The notes beneath the pieces are model-generated. The model was not told where the DNA came from. It made no database searches and saw only the letters and a list, made by a program, of their open reading frames with translations. Below are positions 47 to 60,219 of a stretch of DNA of 64,000 bases, one piece after another. Numbering within the stretch: position 1 is the first letter of the stretch; each line of letters starts with the position of its first letter. The position numbers and the translations under genes were made by a program. The DNA is taken from IMG/VR virus record IMGVR_UViG_3300032288_004964, positions 310,001-374,000 of that record. One strand, written 5' to 3'.

Positions 47-748
47 TTATAAAAAATAATTAATCATTTCAGATGTTTTACCACCATTATTAAAAATCTT
101 ACAAAGATTCTTATATTCTATATCATTTACTTTATAAAGTTGTAAATCAGCACCATATAAAGTATTAATATCACCTGTATTTTCGTCTAAATAATCTTCT
201 GACCACATTGATGAGGTTGGTCTAAATCCAGTTACTTCATATAATCTTTTTAGACAATCTATAACTACTGGAAATTTATCTGGATTAAAAAGACCTAAAT
301 TTAGATAGATAACTGAGTAACCAGGAATGGTATTATTTAATATATTCTCTTGTAGTCTTTCAAGATAACTCTTACCAGATCTATTTTTTGATTCTTCAAC
401 CTCCGAAAAATAAACATCATTGTAGTTCTTACTAGCCAATTTAATCATATCATTTGATAAAGGTTTAGATAAATCAATAAACATATTTTTCCAAGTATCT
501 TGAGTGGATTCACATTCTTTATTAATCCAATTCTCTTCAAAACTCATATCATAAAATAATTGATGTCTAATAGGTCTTGTTATATTATCAGTTGTAAAAA
601 ATTGATATCCAGACTCATATAATTTACACTTAGATAGAGACTCCTCATCTGTTAAATCATAGAATAGTTCTTGAATATCCAATTCAGTCGGAAATTCAGA
701 TTCGGTAATAACTGATTCAAATAACTTATATGTTTTTAAATATTTCAT
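47..748 (-). CDS. Putative virion internal protein (N-terminal leader family)
   Basis: Starts MKYLKTYKLFES; IQELFYDLTDE motif shared with neighbouring paralogs. Confidence 0.55.
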   Translation of the reverse strand: MKYLKTYKLFESVITESEFPTELDIQELFYDLTDEESLSKCKLYESGYQFFTTDNITRPIRHQLFYDMSFEENWINKECESTQDTWKNMFIDLSKPLSNDMIKLASKNYNDVYFSEVEESKNRSGKSYLERLQENILNNTIPGYSVIYLNLGLFNPDKFPVVIDCLKRLYEVTGFRPTSSMWSEDYLDENTGDINTLYGADLQLYKVNDIEYKNLCKIFNNGGKTSEMINYFL

Positions 749-751
749 AAT

Positions 752-1198
752 TTAATTTTTAAATTCAGCTCCAAATCCACATTCTACTCCAAAAACTCTA
801 ACTTTAATTTCCACATATGATATTTTATAGTCTATCATATTGTATTCATCATCCATTAAATTTTCATTATTTATGACAACTTTTTCTTTTTGATTTACAT
901 GATGTTTTCTTGGAATATAAATCTCCCAACTACATCTACTATCTTTTAAGTAATTATCAACTCTAAGAATAAATTCCTTAATTTCATTTATATCAAAGAG
1001 CTCTTTATATCCTCTAAACTTGTCTATTGTAATTCTAAACTCAGGATAATATCCAAAACTTTTATAATATGTATCTTCGGTATCTTCTACTTTTACTCTG
1101 AATCCAGTATCTTGAAATTCAAGAGACATATCTATAATATCATTTTTAATATTATCTCCTCTAGATTCAAATAACTTATATGTTTTTAAATGTTTCAT
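752..1198 (-). CDS. Putative virion internal protein, leader + LExxDxG paralog family
   Basis: MKHLKTYKLFES; IIDMSLEFQDTGFRVKV. Confidence 0.55.
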   Translation of the reverse strand: MKHLKTYKLFESRGDNIKNDIIDMSLEFQDTGFRVKVEDTEDTYYKSFGYYPEFRITIDKFRGYKELFDINEIKEFILRVDNYLKDSRCSWEIYIPRKHHVNQKEKVVINNENLMDDEYNMIDYKISYVEIKVRVFGVECGFGAEFKN

Positions 1199-1704
1199 AA
1201 TTTTATCATTAATCTAAAGTTTGTAAAAGAAATATAATCACCAATACCATCAAAATCTTCTTCTTTACTACAACCAGTTAAAAACTCTACGCCACTAGCA
1301 AAAAATCTTAAAGGTGATTTATCTTTATCGGTTCTATATTTAGTTTCTTTATCTATTGGGTCATAAATTGAATATGTTGAATAATACCATTCGGTTAAAC
1401 TAATAATACTATCTTTTATTTCATACCAAAAGAAAAGATTACCTGGATAACCACCTTGTGGATTAACAACTCCTGGTATTTCTCTATTTCCAGCACCCCA
1501 AGGTTTACTAATATAAACTTCTAAATAAATATCAGTTCTTGTCTTATTAAAGTATCTTTCTGGGTCAATCTCTACATCCTTTCTAATTCTACTAATGTTA
1601 ACTTGTAGACCGTTATCTTCCAATTCAAGAAGAATATCATTAACATAATTTTCAAGATCATCAATACTAGATTCAAATATTTTATATGTTTTTAAATATC
1701 TCAT
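1195..1704 (-). CDS. Putative virion internal protein, leader + LExxDxG family
   Basis: MRYLKTYKIFES; VNDILLELEDNGLQVNI; 4-nt overlap with next gene. Confidence 0.55.
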   Translation of the reverse strand: MRYLKTYKIFESSIDDLENYVNDILLELEDNGLQVNISRIRKDVEIDPERYFNKTRTDIYLEVYISKPWGAGNREIPGVVNPQGGYPGNLFFWYEIKDSIISLTEWYYSTYSIYDPIDKETKYRTDKDKSPLRFFASGVEFLTGCSKEEDFDGIGDYISFTNFRLMIKL

Positions 1705-1705
1705 T

Positions 1706-2092
1706 TTACATTTTATATATTTTTATCATAATAAGACTAGCTTGTCTACCAATCAATTCTATATCTTTATGATCATCAAGATCAATCCATCTGCCATTCT
1801 CATAGAATAATTCAATGTATTCAGGGCCTGAAAATGATATGCTAATACCATATTCTTTTTCAGATATGTATTCTGATATTCTTTCTAATGTGTTTTTAAT
1901 ATTATCTGTTATATCAAATAAATGTGGCCATTTACCATGATCCGATTCTATATCAAAGTATCCTTCACCCCAATGTTTACAAGTTAGCCCTTCATCTTGG
2001 ATATCTAATAACATATCACTAACATCTTGTTCTATTTCTTTTAGATCAGGTTCGATACTTTCAAATATTTTATATGACTTTATATGTTTCAC
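1706..2092 (-). CDS. Putative virion internal protein, leader + LExxDxG family
   Basis: MKHIKSYKIFES; VSDMLLDIQDEGL. Confidence 0.55.
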   Translation of the reverse strand: MKHIKSYKIFESIEPDLKEIEQDVSDMLLDIQDEGLTCKHWGEGYFDIESDHGKWPHLFDITDNIKNTLERISEYISEKEYGISISFSGPEYIELFYENGRWIDLDDHKDIELIGRQASLIMIKIYKM

Positions 2093-2730
2093 TTTTCTTC
2101 TCTTCTTTTTTTCATTAAATCTTTAATGAATTCTTTTATCTCATCATTACAATCAGGAGTGGGTAAGAAACCATATCCTCTCATTCTTGAGTACCATTTG
2201 ATTTGTCCAATGACATTACCACCTTTACTAACATTATAAGTGTCAGTTTTAGCACCTTTCTTTTTAGGTTGTAAAGTAAACTTTAAGGTTGAAACTTCTT
2301 TTTTAGCCTCAAAAATGTCTTTATCAACCGTATATTTTCTTTGAAATGAAGATATTCTTGGATTATAGTAAATGAAAATATTAATATTGTATAATTCCTC
2401 ACCAGAAAACTCTTTCATAAAGTCATCTATATATAAATAGTCATCAGAATTAGGTATACCAATATCAATTGAATAATCACTATCTTTTAGGTAATCTTTT
2501 ACTCTCAATAAAACATCCATTATATCTTCTAATCTAAAAAATCGGTCTTGATTATCTTTAATATAAACTCTTAAGCAATCTGTAGGATCTATACCATTTT
2601 TATAGTAATTAATATTAGATGTAGTATATTCAATGTCACACAAATCTAATTCTAATAAGATATCTTCAATATCTACTTTTATATCAGAGGATATTGATTC
2701 AAATATTTTATATGTTTTTAAGTATCTCAT
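2089..2730 (-). CDS. Putative virion internal protein, leader family
   Basis: MRYLKTYKIFES; IEDILLELD. Confidence 0.55.
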   Translation of the reverse strand: MRYLKTYKIFESISSDIKVDIEDILLELDLCDIEYTTSNINYYKNGIDPTDCLRVYIKDNQDRFFRLEDIMDVLLRVKDYLKDSDYSIDIGIPNSDDYLYIDDFMKEFSGEELYNINIFIYYNPRISSFQRKYTVDKDIFEAKKEVSTLKFTLQPKKKGAKTDTYNVSKGGNVIGQIKWYSRMRGYGFLPTPDCNDEIKEFIKDLMKKRREEK

Positions 2731-3335
2731 CTGTTTACTATTGTTTCATCCGGGAACATCTCTATCAATTTAGATGATAATTCTCTTGTCATTTCAGGTT
2801 CCCAAGCTTTTATACCCCAGTTTTTAGATTCTCTTTGTGGTTGTATGGTAAACTCATAATTTAAAAATCCGCTTTTAACAATACTCATTTTATTTGGAAA
2901 GTATTTATTCCAAGTTATATTATTTTCTCCATGTGAGAATGTTTCACTGTAAACAAATATTTTATTACCTATCATCAAGTGGGTCTTTATTTCTGTTGCC
3001 ATCACTTTTATTTTCAACTCATTACCTTCATCTAAATAATCAAGTGAAAGGTCTTTAGCCATTTGTATTAGTTTCCAGTTTATCTCATCTTTTTTAATAT
3101 CTTCACAAGACAACCAATACTTATCAACTATCTTTTTTTCTTCATCAGAAATACTTTCTATTCCGTTATCTCCATGTACATCATATGGATTCTCATAATC
3201 ATACCCACCTTTTTTCCAAATAGCATACATAAGACCTGTATCTGGATCTAAAACATGACCAATACTATCTAACCTAATAAAGTTATCAGGTATAGTCATA
3301 GAATCATATTCTTCATATAGTTTTAAGTATTTCAT
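2727..3335 (-). CDS. Hypothetical protein with N-terminal leader
   Basis: MKYLKLYEEY; internal DLSLDYLDEG; TAATATATA just upstream on minus strand. Confidence 0.5.
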   Translation of the reverse strand: MKYLKLYEEYDSMTIPDNFIRLDSIGHVLDPDTGLMYAIWKKGGYDYENPYDVHGDNGIESISDEEKKIVDKYWLSCEDIKKDEINWKLIQMAKDLSLDYLDEGNELKIKVMATEIKTHLMIGNKIFVYSETFSHGENNITWNKYFPNKMSIVKSGFLNYEFTIQPQRESKNWGIKAWEPEMTRELSSKLIEMFPDETIVNR

Positions 3336-3345
3336 TGTCTATATA

Positions 3346-4233
3346 TTAAAAGTTCAGTAAGATTTTAATTGTATAGTCATAAATATCACTATCATCATCA
3401 AATTGTCTATTACCTCTTGAAACATCAAATATAACTTCTTCATAGTCTAAAGTTGGTAAAATAGAAGGTAAAACAGCATCTATATCTGATTCTAACTTTC
3501 TAAGATTCATTTTACCAGTTAAATGAGAATCACTATATCCACCAATATTAATAGTAACACAAGGTTTATACATATCTAATATTTTATCTACTGAATAATC
3601 TTTTTTCTTATTAATATCTGAACTATAGATAGTAACATCTCTTCTTTCATCTCCTTTAAATTTATCACCTAATTTAATACCATAATTATCAATATTAAAG
3701 TTAGCACAATTCCATTTTTTATCAGTTACATAATATTGGTCATCATCTCTTCTAAGAAGAATACTTGGATAACCTCCAATACTTAAAGTTGGATTAACAA
3801 TATCTTTTAATATAGAAATAATAATATTTAATTTATCACTATCTTTTGGTTTTGGAACAGATAGGAGTCCGTTATACTTTCTATTATTTGGTTTATCATG
3901 ATTCTCATAATCACCATAAGCAACACAACACATTGTCCATTTTTTCTTACTCTCAGGTATCTCATCATAGACATCATACATTCTATCATTGATATAATCA
4001 GTATCTACTTTAGACATTGCAATAAACATTCTATCAACTAAATCTTTAATCTTTTCCCAGTATCCTTCGCCAATAAAATGATCTGACCATTTTTTTAATG
4101 ATGATTCACTTACCATTGACTTTTGATTTTGATTCCATTGATATCTTTTTAGATCTTCAAACCAATCATAGATACCATATTTGGAAGATTCTGATTTTTC
4201 TAAAAAAGAATTATATTTTTCTAAATGTTTCAT
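3346..4233 (-). CDS. Hypothetical protein with N-terminal leader
   Basis: MKHLEKYNSFLE; 295-aa ORF in coupled operon. Confidence 0.5.
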   Translation of the reverse strand: MKHLEKYNSFLEKSESSKYGIYDWFEDLKRYQWNQNQKSMVSESSLKKWSDHFIGEGYWEKIKDLVDRMFIAMSKVDTDYINDRMYDVYDEIPESKKKWTMCCVAYGDYENHDKPNNRKYNGLLSVPKPKDSDKLNIIISILKDIVNPTLSIGGYPSILLRRDDDQYYVTDKKWNCANFNIDNYGIKLGDKFKGDERRDVTIYSSDINKKKDYSVDKILDMYKPCVTINIGGYSDSHLTGKMNLRKLESDIDAVLPSILPTLDYEEVIFDVSRGNRQFDDDSDIYDYTIKILLNF

Positions 4234-4646
4234 TTTGGAATTACTTTAATATTTACATTTCTAACATCACCAATCATTTCAGAATTCTCATCTAAGAAAT
4301 GACCATCTTTATAATTTAATATGTAAGCAAAATCTTTTTTCTCACCACCAGATACGGTTGCACTTATTCCCCAATTTAGTGATCTCACATAAGAAACAAT
4401 GTGTAGTATTTCATCTTCTATTTCACTTAACTTAAATGAGTCATTATTTATCTTATTGACATCAAGAATGATTCTTCTATCATCTTTATCATTACTTTTG
4501 AATATTGAAGGAACTCCAGGATCTTGACCTAATAATGTTTTAAATCCTTTTTCTTTGAAGTCAATTATAATATCTTCTATAGTTTGCATAATACCACTTC
4601 TCTCATCAGTAGATTCAAATATGTTATATTTCTTTAAGTATTTCAT
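4230..4646 (-). CDS. Putative virion internal protein, leader + LExxDxG family
   Basis: MKYLKKYNIFES; IEDIIIDFKEKGFK. Confidence 0.55.
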   Translation of the reverse strand: MKYLKKYNIFESTDERSGIMQTIEDIIIDFKEKGFKTLLGQDPGVPSIFKSNDKDDRRIILDVNKINNDSFKLSEIEDEILHIVSYVRSLNWGISATVSGGEKKDFAYILNYKDGHFLDENSEMIGDVRNVNIKVIPK

Positions 4647-5176
4647 ATTTCAAAGATAACTTTTTCACTATTTGGTCTTGAATAAACTATCTTGTTAATA
4701 TTCTTAACTGAGTATTTATAATTAGGATTTACATACTTCTTACCTTCTCCTTTATTTAAATAAGCGATTGTTATATGTGGTTTATAAGTTGGAAACTTAT
4801 CATTATTAGGTAGCTTTGATAACTCATCATGTAATTCTTGTAGACCAGAATCCGAAACAACATTGAATTTCAAAACATCAAATTGTTCATTTTCAAAAAG
4901 ATTTATACCATCTATATCAATATGTAATTCACCATTAAACTTATCTAAAATAGATTTAACTTGATCTTCAGTAACATCTTTTTCAAGTCCATATAACAAT
5001 GTCAGATGTGGATATTCTTGAATACCGTGAGAATCATCACCTCCTGTATAAACATCTTTAGGATCAATAGAATTAGTTAATTCATCCCAATTACTTACAG
5101 GAACTTCAATCATTACACACCCGTATTCATATCCAGATGATTCTTTTATAAATTGTAAATAGTTTTTAATTATCAT
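4643..5176 (-). CDS. 2H phosphoesterase (Acb1/T4 57B-like) with N-terminal leader
   Basis: Two HxT motifs (PHLTLLYG, PHITIAY) about 77 aa apart; leader MIIKNYLQFIKES. Confidence 0.75.
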   Translation of the reverse strand: MIIKNYLQFIKESSGYEYGCVMIEVPVSNWDELTNSIDPKDVYTGGDDSHGIQEYPHLTLLYGLEKDVTEDQVKSILDKFNGELHIDIDGINLFENEQFDVLKFNVVSDSGLQELHDELSKLPNNDKFPTYKPHITIAYLNKGEGKKYVNPNYKYSVKNINKIVYSRPNSEKVIFEI

Positions 5177-8608: not shown

Positions 8609-9574
8609 TTAGAAATCTTCATCTAATTTATCAAAATCAATTTCTTTATCAGAAGTTTTTTGATATTCAGCAACACGCTTCTCAAAGAAGTTACTTTTAT
8701 TTTGTAAAGATAACATCTCCATGAAATCAAATGGATTCTCAGAATTATAAACTTTCTGACAACCTAATTCAACTAACCAAAAGTCAGCAACATATTCAAT
8801 GTATTGTTGCATCAACTTGTCATTCATTCCAATTAATGAAACTGGAAGAGATTCTGTAATAAACTTTCTTTCAATATCAACAGCTGAGCAAATAATTTCT
8901 TTAATTCTATCAGGTGATACCTTATTTTGAATGTGTTTATTGTGTAATAAACAAGCAAACTGACAGTGTAAACCTTCATCTCTTGAAATTAATTCATTAG
9001 AGAAAGCTAACCCTGGCATTAAACCTCTTTTCTTTAACCAGAAGATTGAACAAAATGATCCTGAGAAGAAGATACCTTCAACTGCCGCAAAAGCAATTAA
9101 TCTTTCAGCAAATGAATCAGAACCAATCCATTTCAAAGCCCAATCAGCTTTATTCTTAATAGATTCATAGTTATCAATAGCATGAAATAATTTATCTTTT
9201 TCAGCCGAATCTTTAATGTAAGTATCAATTAATAATGAATAGGTTTCAGAGTGTATATTCTCCATCATTATTTGAAAACCATAAAAAGATTTTGCTTCAG
9301 GGTATTGAACTTCTTTTAGGAAGTTTTCAGCCAGATTCTCATTTACTATACCATCTGATGCAGCAAAGAAAGCTAATATCATTTTAATGAAGTGCTTTTC
9401 ATTATCATTTAATTTTTCATTCCAATCTGTTAAGTCTTGAGCTAAGTCAATTTCTTCCGCAGTCCAAAATGAATGTTGCTGATTTTTGTACATGTCCCAA
9501 ATATCGTGATATTTTAAGGGAAACATTACAAAACGGTCTTTGTTCTCTTGTAATATGTGTTCTGTGTTTTTCAT
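8609..9574 (-). CDS. nrdB: Ribonucleotide reductase class Ia beta subunit
   Basis: [47 protein letters not shown] diiron motifs. Confidence 0.97.
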
Positions 9575-9635
9575 AATTTAGTTTATTTATTATTATTTAT
9601 ATCGATCTATATTTGAATAGTTTAATATCTTTTAG

Positions 9636-9643
9636 TATATTTG
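9636..9643 (+). promoter_or_regulatory. Bacteroidota-type -7 promoter element TAnnTTTG (early/host RNAP)
   Basis: TATATTTG upstream of + strand operon. Same element at 13751, 17276, 18430, 19958, 28662, 44275, 50272, 53852, 60115, 62206, 63936 and on minus strand 39741-39748. Confidence 0.7.
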
Positions 9644-9668
9644 TATTTATTAAAAAAGTTTAAGTCCA

Positions 9669-10223
9669 ATGAATAGTATAAACGCAAATAAAAAAATGAA
9701 ATGGTCTAAAAACCGGAAGAGATTGCGTGATGCTTTGGAGAGTAATGCTTACGGTAACCAACTGGGTAAAATGTTAGAGAATTTTCAATTACTTAAACCA
9801 GAAGAGTTCTTACAATGCAAAAATAATTTACTAAAATTAGCATTGAAAAATGCCTCAAAAGAATGTGCTGTCTTTCTAATAGAAAAAGAAGCTAGAGCAA
9901 ATATTGAGTTCTGTTTGTTAGAAACCGATTATAATAAAATTGATAAAGTTTATAACTTAATATCTGAATTAAATTCAAAATATGATTTCACAGGGCCTTC
10001 TTTGCCTCAAAAGAAAACTTTAATAGCTAGATTAATTAGTCCTGAAAAAGTCTCAGAAAATTCTGATAGAGTTGATTATCTATTCAAAATGATTTGCGAA
10101 GGATTTTTCACATCAGAAGATGTTATGGAACAAATAGAAATATCTTACAAAGATAAACAAGAACAAAAAAGACATTTTACCTCCCTGTTCAGGGATTTAA
10201 AACTAAGAGAATTAGGAATATGA
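9669..10223 (+). CDS. Hypothetical protein with C-terminal tag
   Basis: Ends FRDLKLRELGI. Confidence 0.55.
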   Translation: MNSINANKKMKWSKNRKRLRDALESNAYGNQLGKMLENFQLLKPEEFLQCKNNLLKLALKNASKECAVFLIEKEARANIEFCLLETDYNKIDKVYNLISELNSKYDFTGPSLPQKKTLIARLISPEKVSENSDRVDYLFKMICEGFFTSEDVMEQIEISYKDKQEQKRHFTSLFRDLKLRELGI

Positions 10224-10465
10224 GGAATTTATATAAAATGAAATATGAATACTCACGTCAACCTTGGTATAATGGTGATGATGTATTTGAGCTTGACTTT
10301 ATTCATACAGATAGATATTTTTCACAATTTGGAACAGATTGTTCTTGGACTAATTTTAGAACTAAAGAAACTATTAATATCTGGGATATGTGTATGAGAA
10401 AAATAACTGATGATGAAGCTAAGCAATTAGTAAGAGAGTATAATCTAAATCAATTGGGAATATGA
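10220..10465 (+). CDS. Hypothetical protein with C-terminal tag
   Basis: Ends VREYNLNQLGI. Confidence 0.55.
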   Translation: MRNLYKMKYEYSRQPWYNGDDVFELDFIHTDRYFSQFGTDCSWTNFRTKETINIWDMCMRKITDDEAKQLVREYNLNQLGI

Positions 10466-10881
10466 AATTATATTATGATGGTATAGGATATCCTTGTAAA
10501 TTGAAATCTGAAATGAAAGGTAATAATACTTGGTATAGTATGGAACCAGTAAAAGTTAAAGTAACTTTACCTAAATATATCTATGATAAGATTTTATTAG
10601 ATATCAAATTAGACAATGAGAATGATACTTTAAGGGATATATTTAGATTTAAATTACTACTTCAAAGAGGAGAGTTGTCAAGAAATAAAGATAAGTGGAG
10701 TAGACATTCTCAAGTTGTTCAAAATGAACTTTGGGAATTAGAAACATATTTAGATAGATTAACAATTACTTCTAAATTCAGAAATGGTGATGTTACTGCT
10801 ATATTTGGTTTATCAATATTTTCTGAAATAGAATTAGACAAATCAGATATTAGAGAAATTATATTAAATGAACTTATTTAA
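10462..10881 (+). CDS. Hypothetical protein with C-terminal tag
   Basis: Ends IREIILNELI. Confidence 0.55.
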   Translation: MKLYYDGIGYPCKLKSEMKGNNTWYSMEPVKVKVTLPKYIYDKILLDIKLDNENDTLRDIFRFKLLLQRGELSRNKDKWSRHSQVVQNELWELETYLDRLTITSKFRNGDVTAIFGLSIFSEIELDKSDIREIILNELI

Positions 10882-10883
10882 AA

Positions 10884-10972
10884 GCGAAAACACCGAGGAG
10901 CGAATTCGGTGTTCTCTATAGCCTAAACTATACCGGTCCTAAGCTGGGGGATCGCTCTCCCCTCCGGTTCAT
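10884..10972 (-). ncRNA. Candidate structured small RNA with complementarity to 23S rRNA H69-H71
   Basis: GC-rich island with four stems; G-U pairs favour the minus strand; TATATATA motif upstream (10977-10989); final hairpin followed by U-run. Confidence 0.55.
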
Positions 10973-11055
10973 ACATTATATATAAATAATATAAACTTTC
11001 TTTTTTAAAAATATAAAACATAAGTAAATTAATGTCAAACTAAAAAACAAACAAA

Positions 11056-11367
11056 ATGGTAAAAAATGAAATTAAAGTAGATTTCTCTAACACAGAAGAA
11101 CTAAAAAACATTATTGAGAAAGCTTATTTTACTGAAGGAATGGGTGGAAAAATCCTTGGAAAAAACCACTTCATTAAAATTAATGAATCTGATGATATTC
11201 ATTACACAATCTTCAAAGACATGAATAGTGTGACTGTAAAGTTACACAATCCAGAAATCATTGATGGATCTATGAGATTCATGATTGATGAAACACAAGG
11301 AGAAGTAAGATTGTATCCTATTTCAATCTATTGTATTAAAGAAGAAAACAAGTATATTTTCTACTAA
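11056..11367 (+). CDS. Hypothetical protein
   Basis: 103-aa ORF, A-rich leader. Confidence 0.55.
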   Translation: MVKNEIKVDFSNTEELKNIIEKAYFTEGMGGKILGKNHFIKINESDDIHYTIFKDMNSVTVKLHNPEIIDGSMRFMIDETQGEVRLYPISIYCIKEENKYIFY

Positions 11368-11368
11368 T

Positions 11369-11491
11369 ATGAAAAAACTTTGGAGATACCTATTTGTTGT
11401 TAAACCTGAAACAGGTGAAACACTACCCGTAGGATACTTTATCCTATTCATTATCCTAATAATTGGTGGATATTATATAACTAAAAACTAA
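11369..11491 (+). CDS. Small membrane protein (40 aa, not in ORF track)
   Basis: MKKLWRYLFVVKPETGETLPVGYFILFIILIIGGYYITKN, one TM segment, fills operon gap. Confidence 0.45.
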   Translation: MKKLWRYLFVVKPETGETLPVGYFILFIILIIGGYYITKN

Positions 11492-11502
11492 AACTAAAAA
11501 CT

Positions 11503-12585
11503 ATGATTCATTACGACTTTAATGACATTCTAATTACGCCTGCTGTAACTTCAAGTATTAGATCAAGAAGTGAAATTAACCAACATCAAACTTTAATGGG
11601 TGAAACTAATTGGTTACCAGTTATTGTATCTCCTATGGATACTGTTATTGGTCTAGATAACTGGGAACTTTATTTAGAAAATAAAATGCCTATTTGCTTT
11701 CCAAGAGGTATTTATCCAAGAACATATCCTGTTCAATTTAGTGAAGATGATAGAGCAATGCTACAATGTTTTAAAGATGTAATCTTTTACTCATACTCTT
11801 TAGATGAAGCAAATGAATTAGTTCAATGGTTAATTAACAATCCTGGAAGTGATTTAGATGGTAATGTCCTAATTGATATCGCAAATGGTCATATGCAGCA
11901 TATGGTTGATTTAGTTAAAGAACTCCGCAGTAGAACAAAAATGAAGATTATGGTTGGTAATATTGCTAACCCTGATACTTATAAAGTTCTTTCCGAAGCA
12001 GGTGCTGATTTTATTAGAGTTGGTATTGGATTTGGTGGTGGTTGTTTAACTGCTATGAATACTGGTGTTGGTTACTCTATGGCATCACTTGTTAAAAAGT
12101 GTGCTGATATTAAAGAACAAATGAGTTCAAATGATGAAAGAGTTGCTAGTATTGTAGCTGATGGTGGATTCCGTGAATATTCTGATATTATTAAAGCTCT
12201 GGCTTTAGGTGCGGATTATGTCATGTTGGGATCTATCTTAAACAAATGTTTAGAATCTTCTGGTGATACTTATTGGAAAGGTATAAAGTTATCACCAGAG
12301 ATTGCTAAATTTCTTTGGAAGAGAAAATTCAAACTTGAAAAGAAATTCAGAGGAATGTCTACTAAAGAAGTTCAAAAGAAATGGGGTAAGAAAAAATTAA
12401 CTACATCAGAGGGTGTGGTTAGAATGAGAACTGTAAAATATACACTTTCGGGTTGGAGAGAAAACTTTGAAGATTATTTAAAATCTACTATGTCTTATAC
12501 TAATAGTCGGACATTAAATGACTTTATTGGGAATGTTAAATGGACAATAATCTCTCAAAGCTCATTTAATAGATTTAATAAGTAA
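11503..12585 (+). CDS. guaC: GMP reductase / IMP dehydrogenase family protein
   Basis: DFNDILI, SPMDTV, IDIANGH, RVGIGFGGGCLT (catalytic Cys), ADGG, FRGMS; no CBS domains. Confidence 0.8.
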   Translation: MIHYDFNDILITPAVTSSIRSRSEINQHQTLMGETNWLPVIVSPMDTVIGLDNWELYLENKMPICFPRGIYPRTYPVQFSEDDRAMLQCFKDVIFYSYSLDEANELVQWLINNPGSDLDGNVLIDIANGHMQHMVDLVKELRSRTKMKIMVGNIANPDTYKVLSEAGADFIRVGIGFGGGCLTAMNTGVGYSMASLVKKCADIKEQMSSNDERVASIVADGGFREYSDIIKALALGADYVMLGSILNKCLESSGDTYWKGIKLSPEIAKFLWKRKFKLEKKFRGMSTKEVQKKWGKKKLTTSEGVVRMRTVKYTLSGWRENFEDYLKSTMSYTNSRTLNDFIGNVKWTIISQSSFNRFNK

Positions 12586-12639
12586 ACTTAATATGATTTA
12601 TTCATATAACTCTAAACAAATAAAAACAAATAAAAACAA

Positions 12640-12828
12640 ATGAAAAAAGGAACAGTAAAATTCTTTAACGAGACCAAGGGTTTCGGTTTTATTAAAGAAG
12701 AAAACGGACAGGACATTTTTGTTCATGTAACCGGATTAAAAGAAGATATTCGTGAAAATGACGAAGTTGTCTTTGATGTAGAAGAAGGAAAAAAAGGCTT
12801 AAACGCTATTAATGTAGCTTTAGCTTAA
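12640..12828 (+). CDS. cspA: Cold-shock protein
   Basis: GTVKFFNETKGFGFI, DIFVH RNP motifs. Confidence 0.95.
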   Translation: MKKGTVKFFNETKGFGFIKEENGQDIFVHVTGLKEDIRENDEVVFDVEEGKKGLNAINVALA

Positions 12829-12852
12829 TTAAAATATACTTACAATACAAAC

Positions 12853-12881
12853 AAAAAACCCACCTTATGGTGGGTTTTTTT
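12853..12881. terminator. Bidirectional intrinsic terminator
   Basis: A6 CCCACC-TTAT-GGTGGG T7. Confidence 0.85.
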
Positions 12882-12896
12882 ATTATAATGAGTAAT

Positions 12897-13697
12897 CTAG
12901 CGTTTCACCATAAAGAAGAAACTTGAATTTGACATACCATTAACTGATTCTTCAACTTCTTTAACCTCTGCTTGTCCTTGAGATACTAAATCAGCTGAAT
13001 TGATTTTAACAGAACCTGGTAATGTATAATCATATCTACCAGTTAAGTTACCTAATTGTATCTTACTATATCCAACAACATACTTAAAAAATAAATCATC
13101 TCTAAATAAGTTTTCTTGAGGTATGTTAGCATAAGCCTCCATAATAACATCATATTTAACATTAGTTAAAATATGTAATCTATGATTTAATTGGTTAAAG
13201 TTATATTTAAGTGTATATTTATTTAATTGATTTAACATATCAGACATATTATCTAATATAGTTTTGTAAACACCTAACTCACCAATTGTAGTAACATAAG
13301 ATGATAAATAAGGTTGATTAGTAACACCTAAGTTTACTGATAAATTTGGTTGGTTAATACCTAATTGAAAAAGAGAAGATCCTCTTACTTCATAAAGATA
13401 ACTAACAGATTGAATTTCACAAGGAACATTTACATAGTTATATTTTGTAAATTCTTCAGAAAAGAAAGCTTCTTTAACTATAAGAAAATACATCTTTTGA
13501 ACAGCATATTGATAATTACGGTAGAACCAAGGTAAGGCTCTGGTTTCAATAATTTGTCTAACATTATTATCTGGTAGTGTTCTAGGAAGAGCACAGGATA
13601 TAGTTAATTCATTTTGAACTAAGTCTACTAATTCTTCTATTGTATAACCCCCTTGATAAGGAACATAACTATTACCGTATCCATTAACATCTGACAT
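12897..13697 (-). CDS. T4 gp13-like neck/head-completion protein
   Basis: Size and C-terminal KIQLGNLTGRYDYTLPGSVKINSADLVSQG resemble gp13 (WG.NL.K...LPGG...NG); AATATATA motif upstream. Confidence 0.6.
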   Translation of the reverse strand: MSDVNGYGNSYVPYQGGYTIEELVDLVQNELTISCALPRTLPDNNVRQIIETRALPWFYRNYQYAVQKMYFLIVKEAFFSEEFTKYNYVNVPCEIQSVSYLYEVRGSSLFQLGINQPNLSVNLGVTNQPYLSSYVTTIGELGVYKTILDNMSDMLNQLNKYTLKYNFNQLNHRLHILTNVKYDVIMEAYANIPQENLFRDDLFFKYVVGYSKIQLGNLTGRYDYTLPGSVKINSADLVSQGQAEVKEVEESVNGMSNSSFFFMVKR

Positions 13698-13956: not shown

Positions 13957-15015
13957 TTATACTGTAAAGTTTTTCGATCCTTTTAATTTCTCAAGAGTGT
14001 GTTTCTCATCAAGTTCTATGTTTTTAGGTATTCTAACATATATCTTAACATAAAGATCACCTAATCCATAATGAACATCAGGTATTCCTTTACCATTTAC
14101 TCTATAAATCTTACCGTGTTCTGTTCCAGGTTCAATAGCTATTGTTAAGTCACCATGTGGTGTTTTAACTTTAACATTAGCACCAAGTATAGCATCTAAA
14201 ACCGAAATAGTTTTTTCAATGTTAATATTGTTTCTATCTCTTGTAAAATATGTTTCTTTTATTTCTTCTATTATAATTTGAAGATTTCCAGGTAACCCAT
14301 TTCTAGTGTAGTTACCAAATCCATTCATTGTTAGCTGAATATCATTTGAAACCCCTGCTGGTATTTCTACATCAACTGTTTGTTCTTTTGAAACAGTACC
14401 ATCACCGTGACAATCACCACATTTACTTTTTATTTGCTTACCTGATCCACCACAATCTGGACAAGTTGTAGCTGTTCTAATCTGACCAAATGGTGTGTTT
14501 TGAATAACGGTTCTTTGTCCTACACCATTACAAGGTAAACAATCCTTAACATCTGTTCCTCCTTGACCAGAACATTTTTCGCATCTATCTTGTCTTCTAT
14601 ACTTTAACTTCTTATTAGTACCTTTAAGAATTTCATCTATTGTTAAACTAACTTTAATTCTCAAATCAGAGCCTTTTGTTTGCCTAGGTTGTCTATTATA
14701 TCTTTGACCAAAGATATCACCAAATTGACTAAAAATGTCATCCATGTTGAAACCATGACCTTGTTGACTAAATGGATTTCCTCCACCAAATGGATTACCG
14801 GATGCCGATCCAAATCTATCATAGTTTGATTTTTTTTCAGGATTTGACAATGTGTCATATGCCTCAGCAGCATCTTTGAATTTAGCTTCTGCTTCAGGGT
14901 TATCAGGGTTTTTATCGGGGTGATATTGCATAGCCATCTTTCGATAAGCCTTTTTAATCTCATCATCAGATGCACCCTTATCTACGCCTAGTATGTTATA
15001 ATAATCTTTACTCAT
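13957..15015 (-). CDS. dnaJ: Chaperone DnaJ
   Basis: J domain with HPD, G/F region, four CxxCxGxG repeats. Confidence 0.97.
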
Positions 15016-17565: not shown

Positions 17566-17998
17566 ATATTGCTTTGAAAGCAAAAGTAATTGAATCTATT
17601 TTAAAGTTGTCTGGTAATACATCAACTGATTTATAATAGGTATAATTTGGTATTTTTACAACATAAATATATTCTAGTTCTAAACCTAATTCATCTTTAG
17701 AATAAGATTCAGCAAATCTTAAAGTTTCTTTTATTTCATCTATGTTAAATTCTTTTAGAGTTGGTCCATTATGAGTCATAACCCTTTTCTCAATTTTAAC
17801 ATCAATAGTTTTAATAGTATAGTTTTTAGTTTCTAAGTTCCAGGAACCAAAAGAATCAGATTTTGAAAAATCCATTTTTTGAGAAGTAGATTCTTTCACA
17901 CTAACTCTAAATCCTTCATCTTGTAACTCTAAGAATAACTCTTTGAACCAATCAAATTGATTAGACTCAAATATCTTATAATTTTTTAAGTATCTCAT
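17564..17998 (-). CDS. Putative virion internal protein, leader + LExxDxG family
   Basis: MRYLKNYKIFES; FKELFLELQDEGFRVSV; TATATATA upstream. Confidence 0.55.
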   Translation of the reverse strand: MRYLKNYKIFESNQFDWFKELFLELQDEGFRVSVKESTSQKMDFSKSDSFGSWNLETKNYTIKTIDVKIEKRVMTHNGPTLKEFNIDEIKETLRFAESYSKDELGLELEYIYVVKIPNYTYYKSVDVLPDNFKIDSITFAFKAI

Positions 17999-18024
17999 TA
18001 AGTATATATAAAATATCTTAAAAT

Positions 18025-18052
18025 AAAAAACCCTACTTAAAGTAGGGTTTTT
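18025..18052 (-). terminator. Intrinsic terminator
   Basis: A6 CCCTACT-TAA-AGTAGGG T5. Confidence 0.8.
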
Positions 18053-18054
18053 AA

Positions 18055-29831: not shown

Positions 29832-30473
29832 TTACTGTTTAAGCACACTTAGACCTGGATTTTCTCTCAGAGCATTCTCTACAGCATTGTCTACACTATT
29901 CTGGTCGCGATGTATTACTATATCATATTGTGAGCTTACAAGTTTCTTGGTATCTTCTATAACACTTGATACATTTGTAGCGGGTTCAGAAGATGTGACT
30001 TCATCCTTTCCTGAATATTCTTTAGTAGTCCATCCTTTTCCATCTGCCTTACTCACTAAAATCTTATCTGGTATATTATCATAATCATGTTTTGTAATAT
30101 GTAGGACGCCTTTGTATTTTAAATCCAACTGATTTCCGTACATCTTATCTTCATCATATAAAGCAGTTCCCGATACTGGTCTTCCATCTTTTCCCTTTCT
30201 AGGACACGCCGCATAGAATGCGTTTGGTCTGTGTGGTGTAGCAAAAGCTATTCCTTTCTCGATATCATATATCTCATGTCCTTCAGGGGTAGAGTCTCCG
30301 ACATTTTGACCTGGTCTAAGTGGGGATGTACCTTGGATCTTACCACCCGTTCCTATAAGTGAGTAGTCACTTCTCTTCCATAAGTCGCCTTTCCTATCTA
30401 TAGGATCTATTCTATATACATAATTGGGATAGTTGATACTCTCAAATATTCTGAATGATTTTATATGTTTCAT
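29832..30473 (-). CDS. Hypothetical protein with N-terminal leader
   Basis: MKHIKSFRIFES; AATATATA upstream. Confidence 0.55.
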   Translation of the reverse strand: MKHIKSFRIFESINYPNYVYRIDPIDRKGDLWKRSDYSLIGTGGKIQGTSPLRPGQNVGDSTPEGHEIYDIEKGIAFATPHRPNAFYAACPRKGKDGRPVSGTALYDEDKMYGNQLDLKYKGVLHITKHDYDNIPDKILVSKADGKGWTTKEYSGKDEVTSSEPATNVSSVIEDTKKLVSSQYDIVIHRDQNSVDNAVENALRENPGLSVLKQ

Positions 30474-47567: not shown

Positions 47568-50264
47568 ATGAAAAAATTGCTTTTAATAGCAACATTCTTG
47601 ATTACAAGCCTGTTGTCTTATTCTCAAGCACCTGCTAATGATAATTGTAGCGGTGCTCAAAGTCTCGGAACACTTCCAACACCAGCCGCCTGTCCAAGTG
47701 GTATTGGTTCATCGGTCAATGTTTCAGGTACAAATATTAATGCGACAGGACCATTGCCATATACAACATTATTAGGATGTCAGACTGGTGGTAATCAGCC
47801 TGGTCCAGCTTTAGATGTATGGTACTCTTTTGTTGCATCAGGTAATCAAGTTAATATAAATATAACACCTGGTTCTGCTCCATTTTTAGCAAGTCCGGCT
47901 ATTACACTTTGGACAGGATCTTGTGGGGCTTTAGTAGGATTTAACTGTGATAATAATGGAACTTTAACTGGTAATAATTCAGTTACATTTCAACCCATGA
48001 CACCTGGTCAAACATATTACATACAAATAAGTGGTATGAATGCTACTAATCAGGGAAATTTCAACTTATCTGTGAATTCTTCTAATGATTGTAATAATTG
48101 TTTACAAGTTGCTAATCTAACAGTTAGTCCTGCTCCCACAAATGGAACTTACCCACCAAATACAACAGTTAATTTTTGCTATAATATTTCTTCTTTTACT
48201 CAAGTAAGTTCCAATTGGTTACATGGAGTAATACCTACTTTTGGGTGTGGGTGGAATTTATCTACACTTACTACAACACCTGCCGCATCTTGTTCTGGTA
48301 GTGGAACTTGGAGTTGGTATCCATCTTGGACCAGTTCAGCAAATGGTTCTACTTGGGGACCTGGATTTGCTTATGATTATAATACATCTCCTGGCAATCC
48401 TGGTAATAACTTTGGTGATAACTGTTCAACTCCTAATTGGAACTTTTGTTGGTCTATTAAAACAAAAGCTGTTTGTAGTCCAACTTGTACAAACTTAAAT
48501 ATTAATATCAATACAACCGGTGATGGTGAGTCTGGATCTTGGACATCAGTAGCTTGTCTAGGTGATCCAAACTATCAATTTGCAGCAGTTATGTCTTGTT
48601 GTAGTTCAACTGCATCCAGTACAAATCCAACTTGTTTTGGTGGTTCTAATGGTTCAGCAACTGCTATTCCTGGTTCAACCGGTGTTCCTCCATTTACATA
48701 TTCTTGGAATACAGTTCCCACACAGACTACACAAACTGCTACTAATTTAAGTGCTGGGGCATATACCTGCACAGTTACTGATTTTAATGGATGTACTTCT
48801 ACTTGTAATGTTACTATTTCAAATCCTCCTCAAATTTTAGTACCAGTAACACAATCAAATGTAACTTGTTTCGGCGGTTCTAATGGATCAGCAACTGCTA
48901 ACCCATCTGGTGGAGTTGGTCCTTATACTTATTCTTGGAATACAGTTCCTACACAAACTACACAAACTGCTACTAATCTAATACCTGGTACATATACTGT
49001 AACTGTGGCAAGCTCAAATGGTTGTATAAAAACAAACACAGTTAGTATTACTCAACCAACGGCAATAGTTGTAACTACTTCAACTACCAGTGCTTCTTGT
49101 GGTAATTCAAATGGTTCAGCAACTGCTAACCCATCTGGTGTTGGTCCTTATACCTATTCTTGGAACACAACACCAGTTCAAACTACACAAACGGCAACAA
49201 ATATACCATTTGGTAGTTATACTGTTACTGTTACAAATAGTAGTGGATGTACTGGGACAACAACTGCTAATGTACCATCAACTGGTAGTGTAAGTGCTAC
49301 TTCAACATCAACACCAACAAGTTGTTTTGGTAGTTCAGATGGTTCTGCCACTGCTAATGGATTTGGAGGTACTTTATATACATATCTTTGGAATACAACA
49401 CCACCTCAAACAAGTCAAACAATTACTGGATTACCAGCGGGCGTTTATACTTGTACTATATCAAGTGCTGCTTGTAATGCAACAACAACTATTATAGTTA
49501 CCGAACCACCTATTATAAATGTAACATACTCAACTACTCCATTATCTGGGTGTGTACCATTAGCAGTAACATATAATAATACAACTCCAGGTATATCAAA
49601 TTGTAGTTGGAATATAAATGGTGTGATTACTAATAGTTGTAATGTTACTCAAGTATTTACATCAGGTGGAACATATAACTCAACACTAACTGTAACTGAT
49701 GCTAATGGTTGTTCAAATTCAACAGGTCCAATAGTTGCTAATGCTTACCCTATTCCATTTGCTTCTTTTTCTCCAAATCCATCAGTAACTAATTTATTAT
49801 CACCAACTATTACATTTGATAATATGAGTTCGGGTGGTAGTTATTTTTGGAATTTTGGTGATGGTAACACATCAAGTAGTCTAAATCCTACAAACACATA
49901 TGCTGATACAGGAACATATGTGATTAATCTAACAGTAACTAGTCAATATGGTTGTTCTGATTCAACCTATTCTACAATACATATAACTGATATTCTCTCT
50001 GTTTATATACCTAATGCTTTTACACCTAATGGTGATGGTAAGAATGATTCATTTTTACCAATTATTTTAGGATTTGATAAATATGAATATTGGATATTTG
50101 ACCGTTGGGGTGAAATGATATTCAATACAAATTCTGGTAGATCTTGGGATGGAACTTATAAAGGTAAATTAGTTCAACAAGATGTTTATATTTGTAAGTT
50201 AGTAGTTTATGATTTAAATAAGAAAAAGTATGAATATACTAATCACATTTCTTTAATTAGATAA
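47568..50264 (+). CDS. Secreted adhesin-like protein with SprB repeats, PKD domains and gliding-motility-associated (type B T9SS) CTD
   Basis: Signal peptide; repeated TCFGGSNGSATA..PYTYSW; WNFGDG; YIPNAFTPNGDGKND...IFDRWG...WDG. Confidence 0.9.
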   Translation: MKKLLLIATFLITSLLSYSQAPANDNCSGAQSLGTLPTPAACPSGIGSSVNVSGTNINATGPLPYTTLLGCQTGGNQPGPALDVWYSFVASGNQVNINITPGSAPFLASPAITLWTGSCGALVGFNCDNNGTLTGNNSVTFQPMTPGQTYYIQISGMNATNQGNFNLSVNSSNDCNNCLQVANLTVSPAPTNGTYPPNTTVNFCYNISSFTQVSSNWLHGVIPTFGCGWNLSTLTTTPAASCSGSGTWSWYPSWTSSANGSTWGPGFAYDYNTSPGNPGNNFGDNCSTPNWNFCWSIKTKAVCSPTCTNLNININTTGDGESGSWTSVACLGDPNYQFAAVMSCCSSTASSTNPTCFGGSNGSATAIPGSTGVPPFTYSWNTVPTQTTQTATNLSAGAYTCTVTDFNGCTSTCNVTISNPPQILVPVTQSNVTCFGGSNGSATANPSGGVGPYTYSWNTVPTQTTQTATNLIPGTYTVTVASSNGCIKTNTVSITQPTAIVVTTSTTSASCGNSNGSATANPSGVGPYTYSWNTTPVQTTQTATNIPFGSYTVTVTNSSGCTGTTTANVPSTGSVSATSTSTPTSCFGSSDGSATANGFGGTLYTYLWNTTPPQTSQTITGLPAGVYTCTISSAACNATTTIIVTEPPIINVTYSTTPLSGCVPLAVTYNNTTPGISNCSWNINGVITNSCNVTQVFTSGGTYNSTLTVTDANGCSNSTGPIVANAYPIPFASFSPNPSVTNLLSPTITFDNMSSGGSYFWNFGDGNTSSSLNPTNTYADTGTYVINLTVTSQYGCSDSTYSTIHITDILSVYIPNAFTPNGDGKNDSFLPIILGFDKYEYWIFDRWGEMIFNTNSGRSWDGTYKGKLVQQDVYICKLVVYDLNKKKYEYTNHISLIR

Positions 50265-52790: not shown

Positions 52791-52816
52791 AAAACCCACT
52801 TTAGAGTGGGTTTTTT
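52789..52816. terminator. Bidirectional intrinsic terminator
   Basis: A6 CCCACT-TTAG-AGTGGG T6. Confidence 0.85.
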
Positions 52817-52817
52817 A

Positions 52818-60203: not shown

Positions 60204-60219
60204 CTAAAATAAAACAAAC

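What the first reader, a model, noticed from the sequence alone, without database searches (positions are those of the whole stretch)
10884..10972. Structured small RNA candidate complementary to 23S rRNA helix 69-71
Seen: GC-rich intergenic island. On the minus strand it folds into ACCGG/CCGGU enclosing GGGGA-GAGCGA-UCCCC, then UAUAGU/GCUAUA, then GAGAACACCGA/UCGGUGUUUUC with loop AUUCGCUCC. The loops GAGCGA and UCGCUC can kiss, and AGCUUAGG can pair with UUUAGGCU. Plus-strand 10921-10943 GCCTAAACTATACCGGTCCTAAG matches the conserved 23S H69 sequence GCCGTAACTATAACGGTCCTAAG (recalled) at 20/23 positions. 10897-10906 GGAGCGAATT resembles the immediately following rRNA sequence GGTAGCGAAATT. 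The minus-strand RNA, behind a TATATATA motif, would therefore carry two separated antisense segments to one contiguous, functionally critical ribosomal region (bridge B2a; also the I-CeuI site at DNA level). Inference: a ribosome-targeting antisense or guide RNA, or an rRNA mimic/decoy if the plus strand is the one expressed.
Basis: partly seen in the sequence, partly recalled or inferred. Interest (0 to 1): 0.8.

Follow-up and report, generated by a model that had tools for sequence, protein, structure and literature searches.

The report
Phage small RNA complementary to 23S rRNA
The GC-rich island is a roughly 90-base small-RNA gene from a large, undescribed family found in uncultured phages, and its invariant exposed loops are complementary to one of the most conserved parts of the bacterial ribosome, so phages may use RNA to act on the ribosome itself.

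Summary
The island (10884-10972) folds as described. Its plus strand matches real E. coli 23S nt 1907-1929 at 20/23, which none of 150 shuffles reached.

It is not a one-off. I found at least 75 distinct relatives in uncultured, mostly freshwater phage contigs, and none matches any Rfam 15 family. All share a covarying hairpin with an invariant 9-nt loop, AUUCGCU(A/C)C, antisense to 23S 1930-1937. All also carry CUUAGGRCC, antisense to 1921-1929. This box was required by the search pattern. Many carry a degenerate antisense copy of helix 69.

Three tests put the folded RNA on the rRNA-antisense strand, which is the window's minus strand:
- G·U versus A·C asymmetry in the hairpin stem
- U-tails after the hairpin
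- orientation of neighbouring genes

A covariance model built only from distant members finds the window copy on the minus strand (50.5 bits, E about 1e-9).

No neighbouring protein is conserved across the family's subtypes, no RNA-seq run was listed, and no host is known. The function is therefore inferred. My best guess (about 0.4) is a small RNA that pairs with 23S rRNA in free or immature 50S subunits. The plus-strand decoy reading is disfavoured.

The parts
10880..10968 (-). Predicted small RNA, about 89 nt, running from just before P1 to the U-run after the 3' hairpin. The ends are inferred, not mapped.
   Evidence: Fold. Model R1, built from 10 distant relatives, matches 10883-10957 on the minus strand at 50.5 bits, E 1.4e-9, and is the only significant hit in the window.
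10886..10916 (-). P3: an 11-bp hairpin (GAGAACACCGA / UCGGUGUUUUC) that is terminator-like in this orientation.
   Evidence: Family alignment A2: 89% of cells paired versus 51% in shuffles; covariation 0.96 versus 0.21 (0/500); 10 of 11 pairs show double changes. There is a G·U pair on the minus strand that would be A·C on the plus strand.
10897..10905 (-). Box 2: the P3 loop AUUCGCUCC (AUUCGCUAC in most relatives), antisense to 23S 1930-1937.
   Evidence: 7 of the 9 loop positions are invariant across 49 aligned members with unrelated stems. Comparison with real rrlH.
10880..10885 (-). 3' tail GCUUUU (then AAAUAAG), a weak U-tract.
   Evidence: Sequence. In the family, 24 of 80 members have at least 5 U in the 8 nt after P3 on this strand, versus 1 of 80 on the other strand. 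The terminator scan did not call this site.
10917..10932 (-). P2: hairpin UAUAG-UUUAGG-CUAUA. Together with box 1 it forms a degenerate antisense copy of helix 69 (23S 1907-1929).
   Evidence: Compensatory variants exist in relatives: UGUAG/CUACA in L013, UAUUAG/CUAAUA in L009, and a 7-9 bp stem with a nested CCC/GGG hairpin in L006/L007.
10935..10943 (-). Box 1: CUUAGGACC, antisense to 23S 1921-1929.
   Evidence: Exact match to rrlH 1921-1929. Present in every member, but it was part of the search pattern. In 20 of 77 members it sits in the loop of a simple 4-6 bp hairpin with covarying stems.
10932..10968 (-). P1: ACCGG (10968-10964) pairs with CCGGU (10936-10932), enclosing P1a and box 1.
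   Evidence: The same pairing is present in L001, L003, L005 and L009 with no covariation inside this clade.
10947..10962 (-). P1a: inserted hairpin GGGGA-GAGCGA-UCCCC. Its loop is complementary to box 2.
   Evidence: There is a compensatory change in L005 (GGAGA/UCUCC). The hairpin differs in L001, L003 and L009 and is absent from L006-L008.
10975..10980 (-). TATAAT, a -10-like hexamer 6 nt upstream of P1. Inferred promoter element.
   Evidence: Sequence. An A/T-rich TAATATATAAT-like block sits at the same place in L001, L003, L005, L006 and L007. The genome is AT-rich, so this is weak evidence.
11010..11038 (-). TTGACA-17-TATATT, the best sigma-70-like match in 9000-13500. A possible alternative promoter.
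   Evidence: 11 of 12 matches. The total number of promoter-like sites in that region is no higher than in shuffles.

Best explanation
The island is the gene of a small non-coding RNA of about 90 nt, read from the minus strand. It belongs to a large family carried by uncultured phages, mostly freshwater and probably infecting Bacteroidota among others. The RNA has three hairpins. Two short invariant sequences are held single-stranded: CUUAGGACC, and the loop AUUCGCU(A/C)C of the 3' terminator-like hairpin. They are complementary to two adjoining stretches of 23S rRNA (1921-1929 and 1930-1937). That region covers the 3' strand of helix 69 and the start of helix 70, at the subunit interface next to the decoding and tRNA sites. 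The middle hairpin is a decayed antisense copy of the rest of helix 69.

I propose that the RNA acts in trans by pairing with this rRNA segment where it is accessible, in nascent 23S, late pre-50S particles or free 50S subunits. The expected effect is on large-subunit maturation, subunit joining or termination during infection.

Shown: conservation, covariation, strand, complementarity, lack of any known family, and no partner protein conserved across the family's subtypes.

Inferred: transcription, RNA ends, the rRNA target and the effect.
For: The family has about 80 distinct members.

The loop of the covarying hairpin is nearly invariant (7 of 9 positions identical in all 49 aligned members) while the stem changes completely.

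Three strand tests agree:
- 22 A·C versus 3 G·U on the rRNA-sense strand.
- U-tails in 24 versus 1 members.
- Neighbouring ORFs are on the antisense strand in 68 versus 11 cases on one side and 50 versus 22 on the other.

The window copy is recovered by a model that excludes its own clade.

The complementarity was checked against real rrlH. Likeness to antisense helix 69 extends beyond the pattern used to collect the family, with mean local score 6.3 versus 4.2 for shuffled segments and recurrent UAGUUAC / GUUAUAGUU.

Many type B members carry a further hairpin whose sequence is antisense to 16S 519-527.

Other, structurally unrelated phage loci carry the same 23S segment contiguously, again antisense to their neighbouring genes. 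A sarcin-ricin-loop 17-mer of equal length gave 0 viral hits.

The boxes are identical in phages as different as a 28% GC jumbo phage and small polB-encoding phages. This fits a universally conserved target.

No target-like sites are enriched in flanking phage DNA.
Against: No expression data: no RNA run was listed, there is no cultured relative, and the host is unknown.

In mature 70S ribosomes, positions 1921-1937 are largely structured (textbook knowledge), so pairing would need free or immature subunits.

rRNA is very abundant, which makes stoichiometric inhibition implausible.

Box 2 lacks one A relative to canonical 23S (GCGAAUU versus GCGAAAUU), giving 8 bp. The window clade has a further mismatch at U1931, leaving 6 contiguous bp.

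The two boxes are in permuted order relative to a simple antisense.

A whole-RNA duplex scan against E. coli rRNAs does not single out the site: it ranks second, and 8 of 60 shuffles score as well.

The terminator scan did not call the window hairpin.

In the window the element lies antiparallel to both flanking genes, so it needs its own promoter, and that is only weakly supported.

Boxes 1 and 2 were part of the search pattern, so their presence in all members is by construction. Only the loop position, the stem covariation and the helix 69 extension are independent of it.
Confidence: 0.4

Rival explanations
1. It is a real minus-strand small RNA, but its targets are not rRNA. The boxes would pair with phage or host mRNAs. 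In the window it would also act as a cis-antisense of the plus-strand operon's intergenic region. The rRNA likeness would only reflect origin from a captured, inverted piece of host rDNA.
For: Two-loop antisense RNAs against mRNA are known in phages (P1/P7 C4; own knowledge). In the window the RNA overlaps the plus-strand transcription unit 9669-12585 in antisense. Box 1 plus P2 read as a contiguous, decaying antisense copy of 1907-1929. This looks like a captured fragment.
Against: The boxes are identical across very different phages, so the target would also have to be identical. No sense-strand box copies are enriched within about 5 kb of 77 loci: 0-4 observed versus about 10 expected per 8-mer. 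None occurs elsewhere in the window. Unrelated phage elements have converged on the same rRNA segment.
Confidence: 0.2
2. It is an elaborate 3'-end element: a terminator and mRNA or sRNA stabiliser, or a protein-binding RNA. The conserved loops would be recognised by a protein such as a polymerase, nuclease or chaperone. The rRNA complementarity would be incidental.
For: In 59 of 80 members the element starts within 30 nt of the stop codon of a co-directional gene, and its last hairpin is followed by a U-run in 24. Loop-specific protein binding also preserves loops while stems covary.
Against: No conserved neighbouring protein across subtypes; shared neighbours reflect synteny within one phage group. 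Type B members lack a U-tail. In the window there is no upstream minus-strand gene to terminate. A chance resemblance of two adjacent boxes plus a helix 69-like hairpin to one contiguous rRNA region is unlikely.
Confidence: 0.15
3. The plus strand is the functional one. It would be an rRNA mimic or decoy inside the operon mRNA that titrates an rRNA-binding enzyme or toxin. Candidates are a helix 69 pseudouridine synthase or methyltransferase, an m5U1939 methyltransferase, or an H70-cleaving MazF-type toxin.
For: In the window clade the flanking genes are on the plus strand, and the hairpin begins 5 nt after the stop codon of ORF 10462-10881. The plus strand reproduces 23S 1907-1929 at 20/23.
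Against: All three strand tests favour the other strand family-wide. The AACUAUA of the helix 69 loop is base-paired in P2 here, not displayed as in helix 69. The order of the two segments is permuted relative to rRNA. The UUCCU cut by MazF-mt6 (own knowledge) is absent.
Confidence: 0.08
4. It is a DNA-level feature: a relic or mimic of the rDNA hot spot used by homing endonucleases and mobile introns (the I-CeuI / I-CpaI region; R2 in eukaryotes), or a short homology used for recombination with host rDNA.
For: The matched segment is that hot spot (own knowledge of the I-CeuI site, consistent). Metagenomic 23S genes from candidate phyla radiation (CPR) bacteria with insertions beside it were seen. 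Some phage loci carry 37-40 nt of rRNA-like sequence running into H71 (L211, L218, L227).
Against: In this family the site is split and permuted, so no endonuclease site is intact. Compensatory changes in the stems and the strand asymmetry point to selection on a folded single strand. No endonuclease or intron is associated.
Confidence: 0.07

Closest known systems
C4 antisense RNA of phages P1/P7 (Rfam RF01695)
   Same: A small phage-encoded RNA whose two exposed segments pair with two nearby sites on one target RNA.
   Different: C4 targets a phage mRNA (icd-ant), and its boxes differ between phages. Here the boxes are invariant and match rRNA. There was no Rfam hit to C4 or any other family.
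Ribosome-associated non-coding RNAs and tRNA fragments that bind ribosomes (own knowledge)
   Same: Small RNAs proposed to act directly on the ribosome rather than on an mRNA.
   Different: Those are cellular processing products, mostly bind the small subunit, and are not defined by long Watson-Crick complementarity to 23S. None is a dedicated phage gene.
Archaeal and eukaryotic box C/D and H/ACA guide RNAs for the helix 69 region
   Same: Short antisense elements to the same rRNA region, displayed in a structured RNA.
   Different: No C, D, H or ACA boxes are present in the sequence. The order of the antisense arms is the opposite of an H/ACA pocket. Bacteria lack the partner proteins.
rRNA mimics in ribosomal-protein leaders
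   Same: A short piece of rRNA-like sequence in a non-rRNA transcript.
   Different: Those are sense-strand mimics that bind a protein. Here the folded strand is antisense.
Two-site recognition of a folded RNA: group II intron EBS2/EBS1, T-box specifier plus T-box bulge
   Same: Separate loops read separate target segments in the same 5'-to-3' order as on the target. That is the 'permuted' order seen here.
   Different: There is no intron or riboswitch architecture. The element is only about 90 nt and has no Rfam hit.
I-CeuI / I-CpaI homing sites and the R2 target in large-subunit rDNA
   Same: The same rDNA segment, 23S 1911-1937 (own knowledge; sequence checked).
   Different: The site is not intact here, selection acts on RNA-type structure, and no endonuclease is linked.

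Membership tests
New phage RNA family defined here (model R1, alignments A2-A4) | 3' hairpin of about 11 bp whose 9-nt loop is AUUCGCU(A/C)C | tested here: met
   Window 10886-10916 on the minus strand.
New phage RNA family defined here (model R1, alignments A2-A4) | Upstream single-stranded CUUAGGRCC, 22-52 nt before the loop box | tested here: met
   10935-10943 on the minus strand.
New phage RNA family defined here (model R1, alignments A2-A4) | Significant match to a covariance model built without the window clade | tested here: met
   50.5 bits, E 1.4e-9, minus strand, the only significant hit in 64 kb.
Any Rfam 15 family | Score at or above the family's gathering threshold | tested here: not met
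   The only hit in the window is a tRNA elsewhere. Permissive scans of the island and of type B and type D members found only chance-level hits. 14 member loci gave none.
Rho-independent terminator | GC-containing stem followed directly by a U-run on the transcribed strand | tested here: inconclusive
In the family, 24 of 80 members have a clear U-tail on this strand and 1 of 80 on the other.
C4 antisense RNA (P1/P7) | Match to RF01695 | tested here: not met
   No hit.
Box C/D or H/ACA guide RNA | C (RUGAUGA) and D (CUGA) boxes, or H/ACA boxes with a pseudouridylation pocket | tested here: not met
   The 89-nt RNA contains no UGAUGA and no CUGA (sequence). The arm order is opposite to that of an H/ACA pocket.
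Sense-strand rRNA mimic or decoy | The rRNA-sense strand is the one that is folded and expressed | tested here: not met
   A·C versus G·U 22:3, U-tails 24:1, neighbouring genes 68:11. Expression itself could not be tested.
I-CeuI-type homing endonuclease site | A contiguous recognition sequence of about 19-26 bp | tested here: not met
   The left half matches 17/18, but the right half (GTAGCGAA) is displaced 30 nt upstream and altered. The site sequence is from memory and is consistent with rrlH.
Group I intron / tRNA / tmRNA | Detection by the Rfam intron model or by ARAGORN | tested here: not met
Trans-acting base-pairing sRNA | Own transcript with defined ends, and a demonstrated target duplex | not testable with these tools
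   No RNA run was listed. Promoter evidence is weak.

The most novel reading that the evidence does not exclude
Phages encode dedicated small RNAs that dock by Watson-Crick pairing onto universally conserved rRNA at the subunit interface (helix 69/70 of 23S, and in some members the 16S 530 loop). This would give them direct RNA-level control of host ribosome maturation, subunit joining or termination. The split-loop family found here and the contiguous antisense versions in other phages would be independent solutions to the same task.
Probability: 0.35. Interest if true: 0.92.

Novelty: new variant of a known kind. Interest (0 to 1): 0.78.

Why it matters
As far as I know, no natural bacterial or phage small RNA is known to work by pairing with rRNA. 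Helix 69/70 is central to subunit bridging, tRNA binding, release-factor action and recycling. A widespread phage RNA aimed at it would be a new route of host take-over, a natural lead for antisense inhibitors of ribosome assembly, and a new RNA family for databases.

Even if the target turns out to be something else, the result stands: an abundant, strongly covarying RNA family absent from Rfam, found in phages that have no cultured representatives.

Tried and rejected
- **Rfam.** A gathering-threshold scan of the whole window, permissive scans of the island and of type B and type D members, and scans of 14 member loci and 10 loci carrying the contiguous 17-mer found no family.
- **tRNA/tmRNA at the site.** None, and no tRNA neighbours in 42 member loci except L103.
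- **Repeat or mobile-element copy in the window.** The element is single copy.
- **Annotated phage genomes.** No cultured relative. The only hits were a partial match in an uncultured 635-kb phage and a weak partial match (31 nt, E 0.03) in an unannotated metagenome-derived phage record.
- **Sequencing runs.** Only DNA runs (freshwater, groundwater, plankton) hold the locus, and no RNA run was listed.
- **Conserved partner protein.** The genes before the element are highly diverse. Shared neighbours (family B DNA polymerase, a LysM protein) reflect synteny within one phage group. The window's neighbours have no Pfam or PHROG family.
- **Whole-RNA duplex energy against rRNA.** Not discriminating.
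- **A simple hairpin around box 1 as a universal feature.** Present in only 26% of members versus 14% in controls.
- **Nearby phage target sites.** None found.
- **Literature.** Searches by motif sequence and by concept found nothing relevant.
- **Anticodon-loop mimicry and Shine-Dalgarno mimicry of box 1.** Considered and dropped, because loop size varies from 7 to 11 nt and only AGGA would pair.

Full report
**What is at the site.** The window is AT-rich (about 28% GC). It is identical to part of a 385-kb IMG/VR phage contig (L002/L004). The island 10884-10972 lies between two plus-strand ORFs of unknown function: 10462-10881 and 11056-11367. Neither has a Pfam or PHROG family. Both sit in a plus-strand unit, 9669-12585, next to a ribonucleotide reductase small subunit and an IMPDH/GMP-reductase-like gene.

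Against the real E. coli rrlH, the plus strand matches 23S 1907-1929 at 20/23. Dinucleotide shuffles of the island never reached that in 150 trials; they usually gave 16 and at most 19.

**It is a member of a large family.**
- Relatives of the upstream protein led to syntenic loci in other huge phages. These loci keep the element while the protein falls to 40% identity.
About 70% of these are clearly homologous elements.
- After removing duplicates and chance hits there are about 80 distinct members. Four of them come from MAG contigs: two Haliscomenobacter, one Bacteroidetes and one Ca. Muiribacterium. The one I checked sits beside a phage-type DNA polymerase.
- They fall into at least four architectures.
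  - Type A is the window type, with three hairpins.
  - Type B is larger, has a 3' tail AAAGUGAGC, and usually lies near a family B polymerase.
  - Types C and D have other middle or 5' hairpins.
- None matches any Rfam 15 family.
- There is no close hit in 50,697 deposited phage genomes.

**What is conserved.** The hairpin carrying the second box shows strong covariation.
- 89% of cells are paired, against 51% after shuffling.
- The covariation score is 0.96 against 0.21 (0 of 500 shuffles), and at most 0.25 when the partner columns are slid.
- 10 of 11 pairs show double changes.
- The 9-nt loop is nearly invariant: 7 of its 9 positions are identical in all 49 aligned members.

The first box is single-stranded. 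In 20 of 77 members it forms the loop of a 4-6 bp hairpin with varied stems. Elsewhere it sits in an internal loop or a linker.

A covariance model built from ten distant members, none from the window's clade, finds the window copy at 10883-10957 on the minus strand. The score is 50.5 bits with E about 1e-9, and nothing else in the 64 kb is significant.

**Which strand.** Three independent features agree.
- In the covarying stem there are 22 A·C but only 3 G·U when read on the rRNA-sense strand. These become G·U pairs on the other strand.
- An A-run precedes the hairpin on the sense strand, which is a U-tail on the antisense strand, in 24 members. The reverse occurs in 1.
- The adjoining ORFs lie on the antisense strand in 68 versus 11 cases on one side and 50 versus 22 on the other. 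In 59 of 80 members the stop codon of a co-directional gene lies within 30 nt.

The folded RNA is therefore the rRNA-antisense strand, which is the window's minus strand.

The window clade is unusual because the element is antiparallel to both neighbours and so needs its own promoter. A TATAAT sits 6 nt upstream of P1 (10980-10975), within an A/T-rich block that relatives share. The best sigma-70-like match of the region is also on the minus strand, at 11038-11010. In so AT-rich a genome this is weak evidence.

**Relation to rRNA.** In RNA orientation the family reads as follows:
- 5'-CUUAGGRCC, antisense to 23S 1921-1929.
- Then a hairpin that often retains UAGUUAC or GUUAUAGUU, antisense to the helix 69 loop and 5' strand.
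- Then the terminator-type hairpin with loop AUUCGCUAC, antisense to 1930-1937.

The first two parts together are a decaying contiguous antisense copy of 1906-1929. The third part would precede them in a plain antisense, so the arrangement is a circular permutation.

The helix 69 extension was not part of the search pattern, yet it is above shuffled controls (6.3 versus 4.2). Many type B members add a hairpin containing the antisense of 16S 519-527. A conserved 9-mer would match some rRNA position on that strand by chance about 2% of the time (my own estimate).

I also scanned the contiguous 23S 17-mer 1921-1937 against viral contigs, intending it as a test for phage-borne copies of the target sequence. 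It turned up 22 loci, of which only about three are real rRNA. The rest are several unrelated elements that again lie antisense to their neighbouring genes. A sarcin-ricin-loop 17-mer gave no viral hit. The 16S 530-loop 17-mer gave 12 hits, some inside ORFs of GC-rich phages and possibly chance. Four of them sit in the loop of hairpins with unrelated stems.

Together these results suggest that phages repeatedly acquire or retain sequences complementary, or identical at the DNA level, to a few rRNA segments around the decoding centre.

**Limits of the complementarity.**
- Canonical 23S has GCGAAAUU where the family has GCGAAUU, so the loop gives 8 bp.
- A perfect 10-mer exists only in an A1938U variant. 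I found it in 27 metagenomic bacterial 23S genes, apparently from candidate phyla radiation (CPR) bacteria. The SecD neighbour of one of them points to Minisyncoccota, and several have insertions or a group I intron.
- That variant is rare, so it is probably not the usual host's sequence.
- The window clade has C opposite U1931, which leaves 6 contiguous pairs, or 8 with U1931 bulged.
- A whole-RNA duplex scan does not single out the site.

**Mechanism.** I favour, at about 0.4, a trans-acting RNA that pairs with 23S where 1906-1940 is accessible. From general knowledge:
- The helix 69 loop is exposed on free 50S subunits.
- The H68-H71 block is among the last parts to fold during assembly.
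- Helix 69 is needed for subunit bridging and for release-factor-dependent termination.

A low-abundance RNA could act on nascent or late pre-50S particles rather than on the bulk of ribosomes.

The window phage also carries an amber-suppressor tRNA, and TAG ends only 1 of 81 long ORFs. That makes an effect on termination an attractive idea, but it is untested.

In the window and in L005, the extra hairpin loop GAGCGA can pair with the second box. It behaves like an internal target mimic, which fits a base-pairing role for that loop, but it is not conserved more widely.

The rivals are:
- another RNA target, with the rRNA likeness being ancestral (0.2);
- a protein-binding or 3'-end element (0.15);
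- a plus-strand decoy (0.08);
- a DNA-level relic of the rDNA homing hot spot (0.07).

**Verdict.** The element is a member of a new RNA family. If the rRNA target is real, it represents a new mode of phage-host interaction.

Noticed in passing
window 60132-60204 (+): A tRNA with anticodon CUA (amber suppressor; ARAGORN labels it tRNA-Pyl). TAG terminates only 1 of 81 ORFs of at least 100 aa in the window, and reading TAG as sense does not lengthen genes here. Recoding, if any, would lie elsewhere in the 385-kb genome.
   Followed up: partly
L208-L229 (viral contigs): The contiguous 23S 17-mer GGTCCTAAGGTAGCGAA occurs in about 19 non-rRNA phage loci of several unrelated types. Some extend the rRNA likeness to H71 (L211, L218, L227) or to 23S 1964-1977 (L212, L214, L228). 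Some lie next to tRNA genes (L210, L220). Most are antisense to their neighbouring ORFs. No Rfam family matches.
   Followed up: partly
L230, L231, L235, L240 (viral contigs): The 16S 530-loop sequence GCCAGCAGCCGCGGTAA appears as the loop of hairpins with unrelated 9-11 bp stems in GC-rich phage contigs. These may be h18 look-alikes. Other hits of this 17-mer lie inside ORFs and may be chance.
   Followed up: no
L144, L162, L165, L176, L180 and others (metagenome contigs): Bacterial 23S rRNA genes with an A1938U substitution (GCGAAUUUCC) in an otherwise universal segment. A SecD neighbour of one points to Minisyncoccota (CPR). Several have insertions, and L180 has a group I intron.
   Followed up: partly
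L159, L160, L186, L208, L229: Non-rRNA loci with GGGTCCTAAGGTAGCGAATTTCC. In some copies (for example L186 and L229) the sequence is flanked by direct CCGTTAG repeats. They lie beside a terminator-like hairpin, in one case within a 251-kb contig. Their nature is unknown.
   Followed up: no
window 707-4663, 17957-18015, 30435-30472 (minus-strand gene starts): A family of at least 8 paralogous small genes shares a nearly identical 5' end (ATGAAATATTTAAAAACATATAAGTTATTTGAATC, i.e. MKYLKTYKLFES...). The repeat finder reports these as direct repeats.
   Followed up: no
window 12853-12880, 18020-18053, 52784-52817: Canonical bidirectional terminators of one type (AAAAAACCC-stem-loop-GGGTTTTTT). They are quite unlike the hairpin of the finding.
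   Followed up: no
window 48622-49356: Three to four tandem copies of a unit of about 230 nt lie in the locally GC-richer stretch (36% GC). This is presumably a repeat-domain protein.
   Followed up: no
window 13957-15015 (-): A phage-encoded DnaJ-like chaperone with a J-domain HPD motif and CxxCxGxG zinc-finger repeats visible in the translation.
   Followed up: no
L007 3405-3594: In one relative, a small cysteine-rich ORF (zinc-ribbon-like) is inserted between the upstream gene and the RNA element. This shows that the element does not depend on direct contact with that gene.
   Followed up: no
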